This document shows, piece by piece, positions 42,388 to 51,233 of a DNA stretch of 64,000 nt. The number at the start of each line of letters is the position of its first letter. The first letter of the stretch is position 1. Source of the stretch: Basidiobolus meristosporus CBS 931.73 (taxonomy: Eukaryota; Fungi; Basidiobolomycota); NCBI GenBank assembly GCA_002104905.1, contig MCFE01000310.1, positions 33,725-97,724 of the forward strand, written 5' to 3'. The notes below the pieces were generated by a model. The model did no database searches. It saw only the letters and a list, made by a program, of their open reading frames with translations, and had not been told where the DNA came from. A program made the position numbers and the translations under genes.

Positions 42388-44388
42388 TCAGCGACGATAG
42401 AAATGTCTTCTGAAGTGGAAATGAAGCTGAAGCACACCACGATCGAAGCTACTACGGAACCCTTTTTTGTGCGAGTATTCCCACTCTCTATTGACAATGC
42501 GGAAGGCTATGTCTTCGTAGGGCGGCCCTGCAACGAACCTGATGAACACCGTCTCCCCGTTCACCGCCTCGGGATCCGGCTCGATCTTGTACGTTGGTGC
42601 TTGTGACTTGTCAATCAGATCGGGATAGAATATGTTGAACTTGTAGCCCTGGACAACCTTGGGTGGTGGGTTATCCACGTCGTAATGTGTTTGGTTGTAC
42701 TTGTTCCATTCGTAGCCGGTGTGAACACGGTTGAAGAACCTTGGCTTACGGGGTCGGTACTTGTCCTCCCAAAGGTAAGTCGTCTTGGCAAGGGAAGCCT
42801 CGATGTTGAAGAAATCTTCATCCTCATCCAGATCCTGTGCCGCTTCCTTCTCGTACAGGATTCGCGAAATCTCCGAGTCAAGGTCAGTTTGTATGGCCTC
42901 CACAGGCTTCCTGATTATCTCCAGTTTACGAGGGAAGAAGTGGTTCTTCTGGACATTTTGACGTGCTTGGAGCAGCTTCTGAAGCTCCTCCTCAGGGTCC
43001 AACACTGGCAAATCCCGGTCTTCACGGGGAATCTCGCTACACAAAATGGGACTCATTGCTCTGTTGTACGGTATCCCTTGCTCTACCTCTGTTGTCATGG
43101 GCTCATCAGCTTCGTCACCCTTGGCAATCTCTTGCTGTAGCGTCTCTTGGAGCTCGTGCTGTACCTTCAGTGCATCCTCTCGCTGTTTATTCCGAAGCTG
43201 CTCAAGTCTCTTCTGGATGATCACCGTGTGCATGTTTCTAAGCTTAACCTTGGCTTTCCATACCACCAGAGCCTTAAGAAGCTGCTCCCAGTATTCGGTA
43301 TCTATAGGCTCATTACTCGCGAGTTTACGGTGGATTTGTTCTTCGAGAATAGTTAGCTGTTCGTACGTTTTGTTTGACAGCAGGTTGGTTATATCGTCAG
43401 CAACTGCATCAACAATCCCGCTTGGATTGCTTGCTTGTGCCCGTAGTGTGGAGAGCTTGTCTTCGCATACAACGCTCATCGACTCCCAGAATTCAATATT
43501 TTTTGGCTTTTTCTCGAGCGTCAGATACAATTGGAGGTCGTTTTTGAGTTCGACAACATCGTCGTACTCCAGGTTTTCGAAAATCGCATACGGCTCGTCC
43601 ATACTTATTTCCAACCCGAGATCCTCGGCTTTATCCCCTTCGTCAGCGAGTCGAATGTTGATGGCCAAAATATCGATAGGCTTCGCCCGGTTCTCCTTGA
43701 TGCGAATCTCCGCACGCAACTTGGCTTGCTCTAGATGGAACTCGTCCTCCTTTGATTGCCAATCCCCTAGTGCGGCCAAATCCGCCTCTCTCTGTAGTCT
43801 AGCCTTCTCCTCTTCTCTTAATTGCATTTCAATCTCTCTTTCGGTACGTCTCTTATTCAGCTTTTCGAGTTCGATCTTGGCCTCCTCCCGACGCTCTCTT
43901 TCGCGTCTAGCGATCTCGCTTTCCGATAAACCCAATTTCGAATCTTTCTCCTTCTTCTTACGCCACACGAACTTCTGACCCAGGTTGGAGTCGCCGAAAG
44001 GGTTATCGACCTCGGTGTAACCAAAATTCTCCGCTATGGCCAGGATTTCGCTTCTTTTCTCTCTTCTCCTTTGCTCTTTCCGCAGCTTTCTCTCCTCGGA
44101 AGTTTCCCGTCTCTTGGACTTCTTTTTCTCCTTGCTTCTTTTGGATTTTCTGGAGTGCTCATCGGAATCGGAGGGAGATCGGTGTTTTCTTGAGCTTTTA
44201 CGACTCGGGGAGCCACGATCTCTATCATTTGATGCAGATCGGCTTCTATGCCTTCTGCGTGGAGAACGTGACCTTGACCGTGACCGTGACGGGGACCGTC
44301 GACTCCTTCGATGGCCATCCCTGGAATCATCTCTATCACGTCGCCTGGAATGGCGGGATCGCTCCGGGCTAACGGAGCGGCGTGGCAT
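42388..44388 (-). CDS. CACTIN: Cactin splicing factor, intronless
   Basis: RS-rich N-terminus, YTEVDNPFGDSNL.QKFVW, WQSKEDEFHLEQAKLRAEIRIKENRAKPID, KYRPRKPRFFNRVHTGYEWNKYNQTHYD.DNPPPKVVQGYKFNIFYPDLID. Confidence 0.97.
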   Translation of the reverse strand: MPRRSVSPERSRHSRRRDRDDSRDGHRRSRRSPSRSRSRSRSPRRRHRSRSASNDRDRGSPSRKSSRKHRSPSDSDEHSRKSKRSKEKKKSKRRETSEERKLRKEQRRREKRSEILAIAENFGYTEVDNPFGDSNLGQKFVWRKKKEKDSKLGLSESEIARRERERREEAKIELEKLNKRRTEREIEMQLREEEKARLQREADLAALGDWQSKEDEFHLEQAKLRAEIRIKENRAKPIDILAINIRLADEGDKAEDLGLEISMDEPYAIFENLEYDDVVELKNDLQLYLTLEKKPKNIEFWESMSVVCEDKLSTLRAQASNPSGIVDAVADDITNLLSNKTYEQLTILEEQIHRKLASNEPIDTEYWEQLLKALVVWKAKVKLRNMHTVIIQKRLEQLRNKQREDALKVQHELQETLQQEIAKGDEADEPMTTEVEQGIPYNRAMSPILCSEIPREDRDLPVLDPEEELQKLLQARQNVQKNHFFPRKLEIIRKPVEAIQTDLDSEISRILYEKEAAQDLDEDEDFFNIEASLAKTTYLWEDKYRPRKPRFFNRVHTGYEWNKYNQTHYDVDNPPPKVVQGYKFNIFYPDLIDKSQAPTYKIEPDPEAVNGETVFIRFVAGPPYEDIAFRIVNREWEYSHKKGFRSSFDRGVLQLHFHFRRHFYRR

Positions 44389-45218
44389 TGTACAAACTAG
44401 TCTATCAACTCAACGCCAGGTTGAAAGAGCCAAGATTAAATTGTAGGGGTAGGATATTGTATGATAATTCGAATTTACTAGAATTAAATAGTGGGCAAAT
44501 TCCATTAACTGATTGCTTAATTTTCATGGCTAACTTATGCTTGGTAGCTCATTATTCCTCACACAATAAGACAGCCTAATCTATGTTCGTTCTATGATGG
44601 GATATATATCACATACTTGCTAACTTGGCATAGTGTGTCCTGGTGTTCAGTATGATGAGAATATCCCACTAAGGTTTGTCGATTGTCAACATGAAGAATT
44701 GTCACTCAAACTATACCTTTGTCTCTATGCCAGACGGATCGGAGTATGTAAAGTGGTGCTTATCATTTTCATTGGGTAATTGAGCTGTTGCTTTGTATTT
44801 GAAAATTTCAATAGGATATGCTTACTATCCAAATGATAGATGAAATCATATAGCAAGATTCCGACGGCTTCCGATCGATCAAAAATTATCATCCGATCAA
44901 TCATTTATTGATCAGCTTGATCATATTCATTTTCCGCTTATCGGAAAATAATACATTCGGTGGCTTAGATACTTCGAGGTTGTTTATCCAGTTAGGTGGG
45001 TGTAAATGCTTCATGTTCGCGTAATAAATAGCTTTCTATCAATTCTTCAACTCGTTGTAAATGCCCTTTTTAGCGTAATATCCCATATCAGCTATAAATA
45101 TTCAATTCAAACATTTATTTTCCGTCTAAGCCACTGTTTCCAACAGTGGATGGCTTGTACTGTGGGTGGTCGTCAGCATCTTTATGCAAAATATTCATAT
45201 TACGAGAGAGAGATCAGT

Positions 45219-45670
45219 TCAGCATGTGATAGTGGAGGGTAGTGGCTTGTAGACATCATCCACCTCACTGTCTCTGAGGAAATACTCTTGCCAAGTGGCG
45301 ACATGGTCCGGAATCTTCGGTAACATACTATCAATCCATCGAAGTAACCGAAGCCCGATGATAAACATACCTGGAGTCAATAAGAGTCATCTACATCAGA
45401 TCAATGACAAAAAAACCTGTGCGATGTTAGTGGGACCCAATTTCTTCTTCAGGAAATTGCTGAAGAGATTTCATTATCATGTGGGTGAGTTTATAGGTCG
45501 AATTGGATATATCTGGCAATAATGTAACACTTGGTGGGGTCGATATCCATGCCGATATCTATACCCCGTACCTATATTCCTCAAGGGTCAAGGGTTTATT
45601 GGCTTCATTCCACACCAACAGTAAAATCCTTTTATTTCCGAGGGATGCGCGTATCAGCCGGGTCAATCAT
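45219..45670 (-). pseudogene. Possible degraded spliced gene divergent from CPA1
   Basis: Intron-like intervals 45513-45571 (GTACGG..CAG) and 45315-45370 (GTATGT..AAG). Fragments PLTLEEY|RYIQFDL..YKLTHMIMKSLQQFPEEEI and FFVIDLM*MTLIDS need a frameshift and a stop to join. Confidence 0.25.
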
Positions 45671-45814
45671 GATTGGTCATGTATACTGAGAGCAACACAT
45701 TCTTTTGTATTTAAGCACACCAAGTGGTATACGAAATGCATTCCTCATCCCTCTGTCATATCTACCAACAGATCCTCTGACGAAGACAAAAGCAAGCTAA
45801 CCTTCAAGGTTTAT

Positions 45815-45954
45815 ATGTACATTCACACTCAAGAGAAAAACTCCGCTGACTACATCTCTGATCAAAGTATGAATAATTGGCATCTCTGGGTGTTGACGGC
45901 GGATACTAATCCCTTTTCTCTACAGTTTGGAAAGCCCTTGCCCAAAGCTGTTAA
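45815..45954 (+). CDS. Arginine attenuator peptide (AAP) uORF, 26 aa, split by a 59-nt intron (45867-45925)
   Basis: Spliced [17 protein letters not shown]|[10 protein letters not shown]12, Y13, S15, D16 and W19 are in the same register as Neurospora arg-2 AAP. Intron has GTATGA donor, TACTAAT branch and TACAG acceptor. Stop lies 77 nt before the CPA1 ATG. Confidence 0.92.
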
Positions 45955-46031
45955 TTCACTACCAAACCGGAAACGCTACATCAACCACTTTTATAAGAAA
46001 GCCATCGCTCAATATCTACATTACCAAGAAA

Positions 46032-47349
46032 ATGCCCATCCTAACAAAGTCAACCAACGCTCTCCTTGGCAGCTCCAAGCTTGCTAGAAACCTATACTCC
46101 GTTCGTAAGCTGGCCACAATCACCGACTCTCCTGTGCACTCCACTTCATTTGTCCCTCCAGTTGTTAATTCGACCTCATCTCTTGCTGCCTTGAAGCTGA
46201 AGTCTGGTCACATCTTCAAGGGCACCTCTTTCGGTGCTTCCCAATCCACCTTCGGCGAAACAGTATTCACTACTTCGCTAGTCGGTTACCCAGAATCCAT
46301 GACTGATCCATCTTATCGCGGACAAATCCTTGTATTCACTCAACCACTCATCGGAAACTACGGCGTTCCTGGTCAAACCAAGGATGAATACGGGCTGTTG
46401 AAATACTTCGAGTCCGAAGGCATCCACTGCCGAGGTATTGTCGTCAGCGATTACGCTACCAAGTACTCTCACTGGAATGCTGTTGAGTCCCTTGGTGAAT
46501 GGTGTGCCCGCAGCAACATCCCAGCTATCAGCGGTGTTGATACCAGAGCGATAGTGCATGTTCTTCGCGACCAAGGCTCAACACTGGGGCAACTTGCAGT
46601 TGGAGCGCATGATATCGAGGCACCTGTCACTGAGTTCGAAGATCCCAATCAGACCAACCTTGTTTCTCAAGTATCCACCAAAACTCCGATCGAATACAAC
46701 CCCAAGGGAGATGTGAAGATTGCCGTTGTCGACTGTGGTATCAAGCAAAATATCATTCGTTGCCTGGTATCTCGTGGCGCCCACGTGACTCTTTTGCCCT
46801 GGGATTATGATTACAACAAGGAGGCCTCGAAGTATGACGGGTTGTTCATTTCCAACGGCCCTGGATCCCCTACTGCCCTTGGCGCCACCGTAAACCATCT
46901 CCGTTACCGCTATTGACTCCTTTAACAAGCCCATATTTGGTATTTGTATGGGAAATCTGGTTCTTGGACTTGCTGCCGGATTGGATTCATACAAGCTACG
47001 ATTTGGAAATCGTGGACACAACCAACCTGCTGTGAACGTAGTCAATGGCCAATGTGTTATCACCTCTCAGAACCACGGTTACGCTCTTCAAGATAACAAT
47101 TTGCCCTCGGGTTGGGCCAAATACTTCATCAATGCGAATGACGGCTCCAATGAAGGGATTCGACATATGAGCAAACCCATCCGTTCTGTCCAATTCCACC
47201 CCGAAGCCAAGGGCGGGCCACAAGATACGGAGTACCTATTCAATGAATTCCTTGAAGAGGTCCGTGCTGACAAGGCCAAGAGATATGGAACCAGTGTCTT
47301 TGTTGAGGAGACGATCCCTGTTCAAAGAGAAAGCATTGCCGTAGCATAG
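46032..47349 (+). CDS. CPA1: Arginine-specific carbamoyl-phosphate synthase small subunit, with a 1-nt frameshift at ~46904
   Basis: Mitochondrial presequence, [49 protein letters not shown] (catalytic Cys), SQNHGYA, VQFHPEA. Confidence 0.95.
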
Positions 47350-48340
47350 TTCCGAATCCCATCCGTATAACTATAACTATCCATACCTGTATATTTATTA
47401 AACCCATCTCCATCTTACGAAGGTAACTATATAGAACCAATAAAAAGCTCGTTACTTGGCTGAAAAGGTCGCTTTGGATTTCATGTAAGTTGTTGCGTCA
47501 CAATAAAGGAATTAAGAAGTGCCATCTTTACTTGTGGATTTGCATTGTGTTTGAAAGAGAAAGCAAACCAATATTATTGTTACCAGAAGTGCTTATCCGC
47601 GACTCAAAAGAATAGCTAAAGTAAAATCATGGCTTGCGATTTACTAGGTACCACATTAGCTATATACACACACATCGATCCTACTTTCTAAAGCTTGGGA
47701 AAGGTAGCTGCTACCACGTGTTTTGTTGGATAGTAAAGATATCCTATGAAAATAGCATACTTGGATTTCATATGGTATTCTGATAGTGTTCCACTGGTAT
47801 TTTCAGCCAATTTTTCAAGCGTAAATATCTCAGGAGTCAGTAAGCTGGCTATTGCCATATTTGGTGTGAAGACTACTCAGGCACAACACTTACTAGGATC
47901 TATGTCTACTTGACCTCAAAAGGACTAGAAATTCTGATATTGAAAGCTGTGACTAAAAGGAAAAATGGATTCTGCTGGTCCTTTGCAAGTTTTTTTCATA
48001 GGGATATCTATGCACTTGCTCTGCCACTGTCCTGAACAAAGTGCTCCACACCCATGTTCTTGTGTGAAAAGCTGGATTCTTGGCCAACTAACGGTAATTT
48101 TAGTCATATCTGGTTCAGCCCCATACTGTAAGGCTGTATGCAATTTAATGGTGAAATTACTAACGACACTCCATTTGCATGTGTAGAGACAGGAATCTGC
48201 ATTTACATGAGGTTACATAAGCATGTTGAATTTGACACTCTCAAGGGTTTAATGTCTAATACGCTTGATTGTTGGTGATATATTCATTTATTAATTAATG
48301 TTTTTGAGTGGCTCAAGGTGAACCGTTTGGAAGCTTGTAA

Positions 48341-51233
48341 CTATAATTCATCATGGTCTGGCTGTTTTGTTTCAGCTGCAGGCACCGAGGTTGTCTCTGC
48401 CTCCTTGGGTTGTTCGGAGGCGGACGGCGCATCAGTGACAATTGAAGGTGTGGTATAAGAGTCGGACTCGCTTTCGGGGTTAGGTGTAGTGGACTCGGTA
48501 GCGGTGCTGGTAGTGGCAGTGGTGGTGGTTGACTTCTGAGCTTGTCTCTTGGCAATTTCTACCTTGTGAACGAGCCCAATCAAACTCAAGTGGAATTCCT
48601 GGTTTTTGGCCTCTAGATCCTTCACAAGTACAACAGGGTTTTCGTACAGAGGAATCTTGGACTGGGCTTCGATTTGGCCATTTAACCATTTCTCGGTCTC
48701 GTCACCTATCTCCAAGATGTTCTTCAACAATTTGTCAAGAGTTGGAGATTCGATATCCGTCATGTTGGCACGAGTGCCTTCCACGTAATCTCTGGCATAT
48801 TGCATAGAGTCTTGAATGGTTTTGATCAACTCCCCACGCTTGCTAAACTCCTTTTGTCTGTTCTGGATAGGTTTGTACAAACCATCAAGAGTGCCGTATT
48901 GCTCTTGGAAGTCCTTGGTAGTACCGCTCTCTTCATTCTCCCATAGCCACTCCGAGGCTTCACTGACTGCTTTCTGAAGCTGTTCACGCTGCTCCTCAGT
49001 ACTGACCTTCAAGACCAACTCCTTCTCGAGAAATCAGGGACAGAGTAAATGAATGATTCGAGCTTGTTTCTGGATTCCTCACGTGCTCTTCTAATAGCAT
49101 CCTCATCGTCCATGACCTTGATTCTTGCGATGGCTGCTTGTTTGGCATCGGTATCCATTGGCTTTACACCCAGGTTTTCGACTTTCATGCGGAGTTGAAT
49201 CTTTTCAACCTTGGGCCCCTCCTCAGCGGTTTGATTGAATTGGGTACCATTTTCCTTAGAGGCGATGTTATCAGGGTTCACGGTCTTATCGTTGCTAGCT
49301 TTCTCATCGGCCTCCTTGGTCTCCTCAGATGCTTCTCCCTTGATGAATGAAAGCATACGATCCTTCAGGGACGCTTTCTTTTGCTCCTCGGTCAGGTTGG
49401 TGCTGGTTTCAACGGTAGCGACAGCTTTGAGGATCGAAAGAGTACCAGATTTGTTGACTCTTAGCGATACTTGTACCTTTGGCTGGTTGACCGCAACCTC
49501 ATCGAATGCCTTAAGTCCTTCGGTGAGCCCTTCCACATGAACTCTGGCGATTTCTTTGGGACCAAAGCCGTGCTCATACTCCTCCTTCAACTTACCGTAT
49601 TGCACTTCGAATTGGAAATCGCTGGTGCGCTTGAAATTCATGATCTTCTTGACATTGAGCGGTGAGAACTCTTTGAATAATGTGGTTTGAATTTGTTTGG
49701 TATTTTGATTGCCATTCTTGGGCTCGGAGTAGTAGGTGACATCCACAGGGAAGGTGGTGATGTCGTTTAGACGGATCTCCCGGACTTTGAACTGGCGGCT
49801 GGTTCCAGCTCCACGGAAGGCAGCACCCAGAACTGCCGCTTCGTCACCGTTGACATTCTTAGCAATCTTGTTATCTCCAATATAATCCTTCAGAATCGAT
49901 TGGATTCTCGGGATGCGTACACTGCCGCCAACAAGCACTAGGGAACTAATGTCGGACTTTGATAGACCAGCTTGGTTTAGAACAGAGGCAATTGGGTTGG
50001 TGACACGAGCGAACAAGTCGTCGGAGATGGTTTCGAACTTGGCTCTGGCAACATGGGTACGGAAGTCGTGTTCCTCGAATAGATTTTCCACTGATGCGAT
50101 AGTCTCGGTGTTGGCACTAAGAATTTGCTTCACACGCGCCGCCTCCTTCAATAATCTAGCCATCGCTTTACCAGAGTCGCGAATGTTGCTTTTGACTTTG
50201 GATCCCATCTTGTTAATAAACTCATCGGCCAAATGCTCCTGTAGCTTGTAGTCAAATTGATGTCCACCAAGAGTGCGATCGTAACCTACGGCCTTGACTT
50301 CGACTTGAGTGATGGATTTGTTGTATTTCCCAACATCCTTAACGGAAATGGTTTTAAACTCCATAAGACTGGCAACAGTGCTACCAGCACCCATGTCGTA
50401 GAAGATGTGGTATTCGGGCTCCTCAGTAAAGGTTCTGGACATGGCGTAATTCAAGGCAACTAGACACGAATGAGTGAGGATGGACCTTCATGATTGATTG
50501 CGAAATGGGCATTACCTGCACTCTCGTCGTTAATGATCTCGAGAACGTTCAAGCCGGCAATACCCGCAGCGTCCAATAATGCCTGTCTCTCGAAAGTGTT
50601 GAAAAATGGAGGTACCTAAATGTGAAGCTCGGGTTAATCTCTGATTGCTTGTGTTCGCTCTATTGGTACTTTGGGACTTACGGTGAGGATCGTGTCTTTG
50701 ATCTTCTCCTGTGCGGTATCTTCGGCAAGTTCTTTGGCGTGTCTGAGCTGCATGGCGATTAACTCCTCTACTGAATAAAGGCTGCCGTCATCATGCTTGA
50801 AGCTGGCCGTTCCTCTAACAGGATCTTGACCATAGTGTTCATGAAAGTGTTACGGTAGTTTTGGCAGATATCGTCGTCATACAAACGACCGACCAGGTTT
50901 TTGAGTGCAGGATATGTGAGCTTGGGGAAGCGAGTTCCCTACATTCACTGGATTAGGCTGAAGATACAATAGTGGGGGAAACAATAGTTAAAGTACCAAG
51001 TTTAGGCCGTCGACACCGTAAATTCTTTCGTTGTTTCTAATGGCGACCACGGATTGGATCTTTCTCTTTGAATCTCTACCAAGAACGACGTCGATAGGAG
51101 TGCCGGTTTTCACCAAACCGACCTTAAACCATTCAGTTCCGTAATCTATGGAGATGATAGCAGCGGAAATCGGCTGCATAAATGCGGCAAGCGCCAACAA
51201 CGCCGTTGTTAAAGTGACCTGTTTGAAACCCAT
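48341..51233 (-). CDS. LHS1: ER Hsp70-family nucleotide exchange factor Lhs1/Grp170 (HYOU1), with a 1-nt frameshift at ~49030
   Basis: Signal peptide, ISIDYGTEWFKV, IFYDMGAGSTVA, LVGGSVRIPRIQ, NVNGDEAAVLGA, and C-terminal HDEL*. Confidence 0.94.

What the first reader, a model, noticed from the sequence alone, without database searches (positions are those of the whole stretch)
45815..45954. Hidden intron-split arginine attenuator peptide uORF upstream of CPA1
Seen: removing a 59-nt intron with textbook signals gives [26 protein letters not shown], ending 77 nt before the CPA1 ATG. The ORF track misses it. Known: Neurospora arg-2 AAP (MNGRPSVFTSQDYLSDHLWRALNA) and S. cerevisiae CPA1 uORF stall ribosomes in high arginine, and D12 and W19 are critical. 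Both sit at the same positions here, with His17 replaced by Gln. Inference: nascent-peptide arginine sensing is retained in this early-diverging lineage, and splicing of the uORF intron could gate it, since intron retention removes the WKAL half. AAPs are already known outside Dikarya (Rhizopus, as I recall), so the novelty is lineage and variant, not mechanism.
Basis: partly seen in the sequence, partly recalled or inferred. Interest (0 to 1): 0.75.

Follow-up and report, generated by a model that had tools for sequence, protein, structure and literature searches.

The report
Intron-split arginine attenuator uORF, CPA1
A 26-codon upstream reading frame, cut in two by a 59-base intron, sits in front of the arginine-pathway gene CPA1 of the fungus Basidiobolus meristosporus; it is a real but ordinary member of the known fungal arginine attenuator peptide family, and its intron and its Gln-17 are the usual state in early-diverging fungi.

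Summary
The uORF runs ATG 45815, exon 1 to 45866, a 59-nt GT..AG intron at 45867-45925, exon 2 at 45926-45954 (TAA), then 77 nt to the CPA1 ATG at 46032. The window is Basidiobolus meristosporus CBS 931.73.

The same split uORF, with the intron at the same phase-1 site in codon 18, precedes the CPA1 paralog in this genome. This scan already reported that paralog on other DNA as "real but ordinary". It also precedes the syntenic B. ranarum gene and CPA1 in seven other early-diverging fungi. Coemansia has the uORF without the intron.

Among the three Basidiobolus loci the uORF exons are 69-85% identical. The intron and spacer are unalignable, and synonymous sites in the CDS are saturated. So the spliced peptide is under selection.

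Short transcript-like contigs of a Mucorales fungus carry the joined form. No Basidiobolus RNA run was listed, so splicing and the transcription start here are inferred.

Gln-17 is common in these lineages, not a local variant. The "splicing gate" idea has no support, because the outcome of intron retention is not conserved.

Side finding: one extra T at 46904/46905 shifts the CPA1 frame. The public model hides it with a false 40-nt intron. It is probably an assembly error.

The parts
45374..45389 (.). Two GAGTCA hexamers 10 nt apart (complement of the TGACTC core bound by Gcn4/CPC-1-type factors). Candidate general amino acid control sites.
   Evidence: a pair with the same 10-nt spacing lies upstream of the B. 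ranarum ortholog (L002:2154 and 2164), and two copies lie upstream of the paralog. Their function is inferred, not tested.
45672..45680 (+). ATTGGTCAT, a conserved promoter-like element (contains the reverse of CCAAT), 143 nt upstream of the uORF ATG.
   Evidence: Invariant in all three Basidiobolus loci at -143, -164 and -161, within flanks that are otherwise 34-47% identical.
45708..45714 (+). TATA-like element 107 nt upstream of the uORF ATG. It implies a transcription start upstream of 45815.
   Evidence: TATA-like strings at -107, -128 and -127 in the three loci. Inference only; there are no RNA data.
45815..45866 (+). uORF exon 1: 17 codons ([17 protein letters not shown]) plus the first base of codon 18. 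The start codon is in weak context (T at -3, T at +4).
   Evidence: Identity to the Basidiobolus paralog and ortholog is 75-85%.
45867..45925 (+). 59-nt phase-1 intron inside codon 18 (GTATGA .. TACTAAT .. CTACAG).
   Evidence: Introns at the same site are 54-133 nt long in nine other genomic loci. The intron is only 32-50% identical among the Basidiobolus loci.
45926..45954 (+). uORF exon 2: last two bases of Ile18, then WKALAQSC and the stop TAA.
   Evidence: Identity is 69-83%; exon 2 is 29 nt with the stop at the same place in all three Basidiobolus loci.
45955..46031 (+). 77-nt spacer between the uORF stop and the CPA1 start, free of ATG.
   Evidence: no ATG in the spacer in any of 9 loci. 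Spacer sequence is not conserved (22-50%).
46032..47349 (+). CPA1/arg-2-type gene for the small subunit of arginine-specific carbamoyl-phosphate synthetase. It is intronless, with one extra T at 46904/46905 that shifts the frame. The start codon is in strong context (A at -3).
   Evidence: With the extra T removed, dN/dS against the ortholog and paralog is 0.04-0.05.
46890..46929 (+). The 40-nt 'intron' of the public 425-aa model (P0001). Probably not an intron but a patch over the frameshift.
   Evidence: the model lacks 13 residues that are present in P0002, P0003, P0004 and P0020; this DNA aligns codon for codon with the ortholog apart from the one extra T.

Best explanation
This is the arginine attenuator peptide (AAP) uORF of one of the two CPA1/arg-2 genes of Basidiobolus meristosporus. 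The primary transcript probably starts about 50-80 nt upstream of 45815. The 59-nt intron is removed, which joins the two halves of a 26-codon uORF. Some scanning ribosomes start at the weak-context uORF AUG. The rest leak past it to the strong-context CPA1 AUG 77 nt downstream of the uORF stop. By homology with the Neurospora and yeast systems, when arginine is high the nascent peptide (core D12-Y-I-S-D-Q-I-W19-K) holds the ribosome at the end of the uORF. That blocks scanning to CPA1 and probably exposes the mRNA to nonsense-mediated decay. Shown here: the sequence anatomy, selection on the spliced peptide, the age and spread of the intron, and the identity of the downstream gene. Inferred: splicing and the transcription start in Basidiobolus itself, and arginine-dependent stalling.
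For: Anatomy is. The downstream gene is a CPS small subunit, 100% identical to the B. meristosporus CBS 931.73 protein, and its nearest named relatives are arginine-specific CPS small chains. The same uORF, with exon 1 of 52 nt, the intron in codon 18 and exon 2 of 29 nt, is in the paralog L001 and the syntenic B. ranarum locus L002. uORF exons are 69-85% identical, against 32-50% for the intron and 22-50% for the spacer, and 16 of 25 variable sites fall on codon position 3 of the spliced frame. CDS dS between these loci is 1.6-3.7, so neutral DNA is randomised. The split uORF is also in Calcarisporiella, Phycomyces, Rhizopus, Gilbertella, Linnemannia, Syncephalis and Geosiphon, and is contiguous in Coemansia. 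Short Logan contigs L011 and L012, whose protein is 90% identical to Gilbertella's, carry the joined uORF exactly as predicted from the genomic exons. In 10 of 10 intron-bearing loci the uORF AUG has a pyrimidine at -3 and the main AUG has A at -3. In 9 of 9 loci checked the spacer holds no AUG. The motif is unique in the window. Literature: the N. crassa AAP is 24 aa, D12N abolishes the arginine response and Asp-12 contacts uL4 (PMC7038982). Cryptococcus CPA1 has the uORF, shows high ribosome occupancy on it and rises 5-fold in upf1-delta (PMC7049704).
Against: There is no RNA evidence from Basidiobolus: no RNA run was listed, so the splice and the transcription start are inferred. Position 17 is Gln, not the His of the studied peptides. 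The tail after Trp19 is seven residues, against five in Neurospora as I recall it. Neither difference has been tested for stalling. As assembled, the CPA1 body carries a frameshift. If that is real, the uORF guards a crippled gene.
Confidence: 0.82

Rival explanations
1. The uORF is a genuine AAP, and in addition the intron acts as a regulated gate. Under some conditions the intron is retained, the Trp19 half is lost, and CPA1 escapes or changes its arginine control.
For: The intron sits between the two halves of the conserved core. It has kept exactly this site in ten genomic loci of several phyla, and in eight of those ten it is the only intron, since their CPA1 CDS is intronless. In both B. 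meristosporus copies a retained intron would extend the uORF across the CPA1 ATG.
Against: The outcome of retention is not conserved. The frame stops inside the intron in B. ranarum, Calcarisporiella, Phycomyces, Syncephalis, Geosiphon and Gilbertella, and runs on in frame in Rhizopus. Intron sequence and length are free to vary. Coemansia, and from my own knowledge Neurospora and yeast, do without the intron. Introns near the 5' end are generally the last to be lost, so passive retention is enough to explain it. No RNA data exist.
Confidence: 0.08
2. The frameshift at 46904/46905 is real. This CPA1 copy is then a very young pseudogene, or makes a crippled enzyme through the 40-nt splice, and its AAP uORF is an intact relic. 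The paralog on MCFE01000213 does the work.
For: The assembly carries an extra T relative to both the ortholog and the paralog. A second CPA1 copy exists.
Against: Apart from that one base the CDS is intact, with dN/dS 0.04-0.05. The uORF, the start contexts and the promoter-like elements are all intact. The Hsp70-family gene 2.1 kb downstream also has a one-base indel, in a CC run, relative to B. ranarum. Two broken conserved neighbours point to assembly error. Other notes of this scan report one-base frameshifts elsewhere in this assembly (leads only).
Confidence: 0.1
3. A chance short ORF with fortuitous splice-like signals and no function.
For: None beyond the small size of the feature.
Against: The motif is expected 0.005 times per window and occurs once, 184 nt upstream of the CPA1 ATG. 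It is conserved across saturated divergence and across phyla.
Confidence: 0.005

Closest known systems
Neurospora crassa arg-2 uORF (arginine attenuator peptide, 24 aa)
   Same: It is a uORF in the leader of the gene for the small subunit of arginine-specific CPS. It has the same core with Asp12 and Trp19 at the same positions. Asp12 is the residue whose D12N change abolishes the arginine response and which contacts uL4 (PMC7038982). The CPS N-terminus here also looks like a mitochondrial presequence, as I recall for ARG-2.
   Different: The peptide here is 26 codons, has Gln instead of His at 17, and has a longer tail after Trp19. The uORF is split by an intron. From my own knowledge, not checked here, the Neurospora uORF is contiguous and has a leader intron downstream of it.
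Saccharomyces cerevisiae CPA1 uORF (25 aa)
   Same: Same gene family downstream and the same DYISD-x-IWK core (peptide as I recall it). The uORF-dependent decay of CPA1 mRNA by NMD is cited in PMC7049704.
   Different: The yeast leader has no intron, the peptide has His at the position equivalent to 17, and yeast CPA1 is cytosolic (own knowledge).
CPA1 paralog of the same genome (MCFE01000213, locus L001; earlier scan note s1-222124)
   Same: A 26-codon uORF with exon 1 of 52 nt, the intron at the same site and exon 2 of 29 nt. 22 of 26 residues are identical. It has the same weak and strong start contexts and the same ATTGGTCAT and TATA-like elements.
   Different: The intron is 76 nt and the spacer 108 nt. 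The neighbours differ (a kinase downstream). Its CDS has no frameshift.
   Same: Split uORF with the intron at the identical site, Gln17 and the MYIH start.
   Different: 25 codons, DYICDQ instead of DYISDQ, a 54-nt intron and a 28-nt spacer.
Toxoplasma gondii ApiAT1 uORF
   Same: An arginine-responsive uORF whose peptide resembles the AAP and depends on a conserved Asp (PMC8370653).
   Different: It controls an arginine transporter, not CPS, in an apicomplexan. Homology to the fungal AAP is uncertain.

Membership tests
Fungal arginine attenuator peptide (AAP) uORF | Lies in the 5' leader of the gene for the small subunit of arginine-specific carbamoyl-phosphate synthetase (CPA1/arg-2) | tested here: met
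   The downstream ORF has CPSase_sm_chain and GATase domains. Its best hits are fungal arginine-specific CPS small chains. The uORF stop lies 77 nt before the ATG.
Fungal arginine attenuator peptide (AAP) uORF | Peptide of about 24-26 residues with the conserved core D-Y-(I/L)-S-D-(H)-(I/L)-W-(K/R) | tested here: met
26 codons with core DYISDQIWK. The only departure is Gln for His at 17. That departure is shared by 10 of the 12 related leaders read here, counting the Logan contig pair as one.
Fungal arginine attenuator peptide (AAP) uORF | Asp at position 12 (D12N abolishes regulation) and Trp at 19 | tested here: met
Asp12 and Trp19 are present. The importance of D12 is from PMC7038982.
Fungal arginine attenuator peptide (AAP) uORF | Start-codon design for leaky scanning: weak uORF AUG, strong main AUG, no AUG between them | tested here: met
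   T at -3 and T at +4 for the uORF AUG, and A at -3 for the main AUG, in this window and in all 10 intron-bearing loci. The spacer holds no ATG in 9 of 9 loci checked. That this is the design of the known AAP uORFs rests on my own knowledge.
Fungal arginine attenuator peptide (AAP) uORF | Selection on the peptide sequence rather than on the RNA | tested here: met
   16 of 25 variable sites are at codon position 3 of the spliced frame. Exons are 69-85% identical, against 22-50% for the flanks, at saturated dS.
Fungal arginine attenuator peptide (AAP) uORF | The uORF is present and contiguous in the mature mRNA | tested here: inconclusive
   No RNA run was listed for this DNA. Indirect support: transcript-like Logan contigs of a Mucorales relative carry the joined uORF, and a conserved TATA-like element lies 107 nt upstream.
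Fungal arginine attenuator peptide (AAP) uORF | Arginine-dependent ribosome stalling at the end of the uORF and repression of the main ORF | not testable with these tools
   Needs toeprinting, a reporter assay or ribosome profiling.
Carbamoyl-phosphate synthetase small subunit (class I glutamine amidotransferase) | CPSase small-chain domain plus a GATase domain with the catalytic Cys (GIC motif) and the His-Pro-Glu motif, in one open frame | tested here: inconclusive
   The domains and the motifs GICMG and FHPEA are present. The frame as assembled is broken by one extra T at 46904/46905. This is probably an assembly error.

The most novel reading that the evidence does not exclude
The intron that splits the AAP between residues 17 and 18 is kept by selection, not by inertia. 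It has held one exact site from Basidiobolus to Mucorales, Mortierellomycotina, Glomeromycotina and Zoopagomycotina. In eight of the ten intron-bearing loci the 1.3-kb CDS is intronless, which makes it the gene's only intron. It may couple CPA1 output to splicing, for example through exon-junction marks that affect translation or decay of the leader, or through retained-intron transcripts that escape arginine control.
Probability: 0.1. Interest if true: 0.55.

Novelty: new member of a known kind. Interest (0 to 1): 0.25.

Why it matters
It extends the arginine attenuator peptide to Basidiobolomycota, where both CPA1 copies carry it. Together with the relatives read here, it shows that the peptide, its leaky-scanning layout and an intron inside codon 18 go back to the common ancestor of the zygomycete-grade fungal lineages sampled here (Basidiobolus, Mucorales, Mortierellomycotina, Glomeromycotina, Zoopagomycotina). 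That is useful for annotation, because gene callers and ORF scans miss the uORF. It also offers natural variants, Gln17 and longer tails, for people who study nascent-peptide stalling. It does not change the known mechanism. A practical by-product is that the public CPA1 model of this locus (425 aa) is probably wrong.

Tried and rejected
RNA evidence: the look-up of sequencing runs (kind rna) listed no run and its cap is one, so read laying could not be used.

Literature: the key papers are not held. These are Hood et al. 2007 Fungal Genet Biol 44:93, Spevak et al. 2010 JBC, Dever et al. 2020 Annu Rev Genet, and Zhang and Sachs 2015 Genetics. I therefore could not check whether the uORF intron is described in print. 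No held paper pairs the AAP with Basidiobolus, and the top-ranked hits of a search pairing it with zygomycete terms lack the AAP term. No held paper prints the AAP sequences.

Rfam: nothing in 44000-48000.

The 40-nt intron of the public CPA1 model is rejected. It removes 13 conserved residues, and its DNA aligns with the ortholog apart from one base.

A second leader intron ending just before the uORF ATG was considered. A CTAAC..YAG-like string sits 6-7 nt upstream in the three Basidiobolus loci. I set it aside because a conserved TATA-like element 107-128 nt upstream makes it unnecessary, and because the distance from that string to the ATG differs between loci, so no upstream coding frame is shared.

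A conserved effect of intron retention was looked for and not found.

The joined peptide was never sent to a search tool. Scripts joined the two exons by coordinates from the stored files only to translate across the split codon.

Full report
**Observation**

The window sequence holds an ATG at 45815. Seventeen codons follow, translating to [17 protein letters not shown], and then one further base, A, at 45866.

From 45867 runs a 59-nt stretch. It begins GTATGA, holds TACTAAT 17 nt from its end, and finishes with a pyrimidine run and CAG at 45925.

The next two bases (TT) complete an ATT codon (Ile18). WKALAQSC and TAA follow, ending at 45954.

The ATG of the downstream gene is at 46032, 77 nt further on. 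There is no ATG in between.

The mechanical ORF list shows only the unspliced frame 45503-46087.

The motif DY[ILV][SAC]D[QH] occurs once in all six frames of the window, at this site. Shuffled windows give 0.005 on average. Every coordinate and residue position in the finding is correct.

**Organism and downstream gene**

The downstream ORF has CPSase_sm_chain (E 2e-46) and class-I GATase domains. It is 100% identical to the protein named "small subunit of carbamoyl-phosphate synthase" of Basidiobolus meristosporus CBS 931.73 (P0001). That species is in phylum Basidiobolomycota.

The same genome has a paralog, P0003, at 82% identity over the query. B. ranarum has P0002 at 85%.

The B. ranarum locus (L002) has an Hsp70-family gene downstream on the opposite strand, as this window does. 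It is therefore the syntenic ortholog. The paralog locus (L001) has a kinase downstream instead.

**Comparative test of the spliced uORF**

Both L001 and L002 carry the same arrangement upstream of their CPA1 ATG.

| Feature | Window | Paralog L001 | B. ranarum L002 |
|---|---|---|---|
| uORF exon 1 (nt) | 52 | 52 | 52 |
| Intron in codon 18 (nt) | 59 | 76 | 86 |
| uORF exon 2 incl. stop (nt) | 29 | 29 | 29 |
| Peptide | [26 protein letters not shown] | MYFHTQEKNSSDYISDQIWKALNQTN | MYCHAQEKNSSDYISDQIWKALAQTC |

In a three-way alignment the segments differ sharply in pairwise identity:

- uORF exon 1: 75-85%.
- uORF exon 2: 69-83%.
- Intron: 32-50%.
- Spacer: 22-50%.

Sixteen of the 25 variable uORF sites fall on codon position 3 of the spliced frame.

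Synonymous divergence between the three CDSs is saturated, with dS of 1.6-3.7. Unconstrained DNA has therefore been randomised. What has been preserved is the peptide read across the splice. This is strong indirect evidence that the intron is removed and the joined frame is translated.

**How far the arrangement reaches**

I read CPA1 leaders from other early-diverging fungi. The following all have the uORF split at the same point, after base 52 of the uORF, by GT..AG introns of 54-133 nt:

- Calcarisporiella thermophila
- Phycomyces blakesleeanus
- Rhizopus delemar
- Gilbertella persicaria
- Linnemannia hyalina
- Syncephalis fuscata
- Geosiphon pyriformis (after base 49, because its N-terminus is one codon shorter)

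Coemansia reversa has the uORF contiguous (MYTHSFERNSSDYIADQVWKALDI).

In the chytrid Synchytrium microbalum, DYIADQ is followed by an intron that seems to start two bases earlier, and the next exon reads VYK rather than (I/V)WK. I did not resolve its 5' part.

In eight of the ten intron-bearing loci the 1.3-kb CPA1 CDS has no intron. The uORF intron is then the gene's only one.

In all ten the uORF AUG has a pyrimidine at -3 and the main AUG has A at -3. In all nine checked, the spacer has no AUG. That is the layout expected for leaky scanning past a regulatory uORF.

**Transcript-level evidence from a relative**

Four short Logan contigs of 1.4-1.6 kb, from four runs, end near the gene's borders. 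They encode a CPA1 that is 90% identical to that of Gilbertella and Choanephora.

The two with enough leader, L011 and L012, carry the uORF contiguous, reading ..GATCAAATCTGGAAA.. and translating to MYIHAHEKCSADYICDQIWKSSVNL. The junction is exactly where the Gilbertella genomic locus has a 66-nt intron.

I take these contigs for transcripts from their size and ends. Their library type and species were not shown to me, so this is supportive but not proof. It also concerns Mucorales, not Basidiobolus.

**What could not be shown**

No RNA run was listed for this DNA. Splicing and the transcription start in B. meristosporus are therefore inferred.

For the start, there is a conserved ATTGGTCAT (reverse CCAAT) at -143, -164 and -161 in the three Basidiobolus loci. 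A TATA-like string lies at -107, -128 and -127 from the uORF ATG. This places the likely start upstream of 45815.

Two GAGTCA hexamers 10 nt apart at 45374-45389 recur with the same spacing in B. ranarum. They suggest general amino acid control. I did not test this further.

Arginine-dependent stalling cannot be tested with these tools.

**Mechanism**

The mechanism is by homology with the studied systems. The N. crassa arg-2 uORF peptide is 24 aa and stalls ribosomes in response to arginine. D12N abolishes this, and Asp-12 contacts uL4 at the tunnel constriction (PMC7038982).

The Cryptococcus CPA1 homolog has the uORF with strong ribosome occupancy, a repressed main ORF and a 5-fold rise in upf1-delta (PMC7049704).

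Here Asp12 and Trp19 are in place. I therefore expect arginine-dependent stalling near the uORF end, blocked scanning to CPA1 and probably NMD.

Two untested differences remain: Gln17, and a tail of seven residues after Trp19.

Gln17 is not a Basidiobolus variant. It is present in 10 of the 12 leaders I read (11 genomic loci and the Logan contig pair). Only Syncephalis has Asp-His at positions 16-17, and Geosiphon reads His-Gln.

The intron is likewise the common state. A spliced AAP uORF is therefore very probably already in the literature. I recall that Hood et al. 2007 covered this, but that paper is not held, so I could not check.

The splicing-gate idea finds no comparative support. A retained intron would extend the uORF over the CPA1 ATG in both B. 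meristosporus copies. In B. ranarum and five of the seven other intron-bearing loci it would stop inside the intron; in Rhizopus it runs on in frame to the normal stop.

**Earlier work of this scan**

A note on another piece of this genome (s1-222124) describes a 26-codon AAP uORF with a 76-base intron before CPA1 and calls it real but ordinary. That is the paralog I read as L001, and my reading agrees. The present locus is the second copy.

**Side finding: the CPA1 frame**

The public model P0001 has 425 aa, against 440 and 442 for the paralog and ortholog. It lacks 13 residues between the GPGSP loop and the PIFGIC catalytic motif.

The model reaches this by splicing out 46890-46929, which is 40 nt. 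That DNA aligns with the ortholog and paralog codon for codon, except for one extra T at 46904/46905.

With that base set aside, the CDS is open over 438 codons. Its dN/dS is 0.04-0.05.

The Hsp70-family gene 2.1 kb downstream also shows a one-base difference from B. ranarum. A C is missing from a CC run near 49031, in a stretch that is otherwise 91% identical, and this shifts its frame.

Two conserved neighbours each broken by a single base, together with other scan notes of one-base frameshifts in this assembly (leads only), make assembly error the likelier cause. I put it at about 0.8. A real, very recent frameshift is not excluded.

The two exon peptides, of 17 and 8 residues, are below those tools' size limits. 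Scripts joined the exons by coordinates from the stored files only to translate across the split codon.

**Verdict**

The feature is a genuine, conserved, intron-split AAP uORF: a new member of a known family, in a lineage where it had not been pointed out in the papers I could search. The intron and Gln17 are ancestral-looking traits of early-diverging fungi rather than novelties of this locus. Interest is low to moderate.

Noticed in passing
window 46890-46929 (extra T at 46904/46905): CPA1 carries a one-base insertion relative to its B. ranarum ortholog and its own paralog. The public 425-aa model bridges it with a 40-nt 'intron' that deletes 13 conserved residues. It is probably an assembly error, and the true protein would have 438 residues.
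   Followed up: yes
window 49025-49040, minus strand (ORFs 48341-49018 and 49009-50454): The Hsp70/HYOU1-family gene downstream of CPA1 changes frame at a single missing C (GATTT-CTC against GATTTCCTC in B. ranarum). This is a second one-base indel within 2.2 kb and supports indel errors in this assembly.
   Followed up: partly
window 45672-45680 and 45708-45714: ATTGGTCAT (reverse CCAAT) and a TATA-like string are conserved at nearly the same distances from the uORF ATG in the window, the paralog and B. ranarum, inside otherwise unalignable DNA. This is a likely core promoter.
   Followed up: partly
window 45374-45389; L002:2154-2169: A pair of GAGTCA hexamers (Gcn4/CPC-1-type core) exactly 10 nt apart lies upstream of CPA1 in both B. 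meristosporus and B. ranarum. These are possible general amino acid control sites.
   Followed up: no
window 45791-45814; L001:2712-2735; L002:2682-2705: The 24 nt before the uORF ATG are 62-71% identical among the three loci and read like a branch site plus 3' splice site (CTAAC..YAG). This could be a further leader intron or a conserved start-context element. It is unresolved without RNA data.
   Followed up: partly
window 45736-45780: A 14-codon ORF (ATG at 45736) lies between the TATA-like element and the AAP uORF. It is not conserved in the paralog (no ATG there). B. ranarum has only ATG-TAG at the matching place.
   Followed up: partly
L009:1318-1450 (Synchytrium microbalum): The chytrid leader has DYIADQ followed by an intron that seems to start two bases earlier than in the other fungi, and the next exon reads VYK (Tyr where the others have Trp19). 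The uORF's 5' part seems to lie in a further upstream exon. This is a possible divergent or decayed AAP.
   Followed up: no
L007:546-744 (Linnemannia hyalina): The AAP uORF lies 756 nt upstream of the annotated CPA1 ATG, ten times the usual spacer. Either the leader is very long or holds another intron, or the annotated start is wrong.
   Followed up: no
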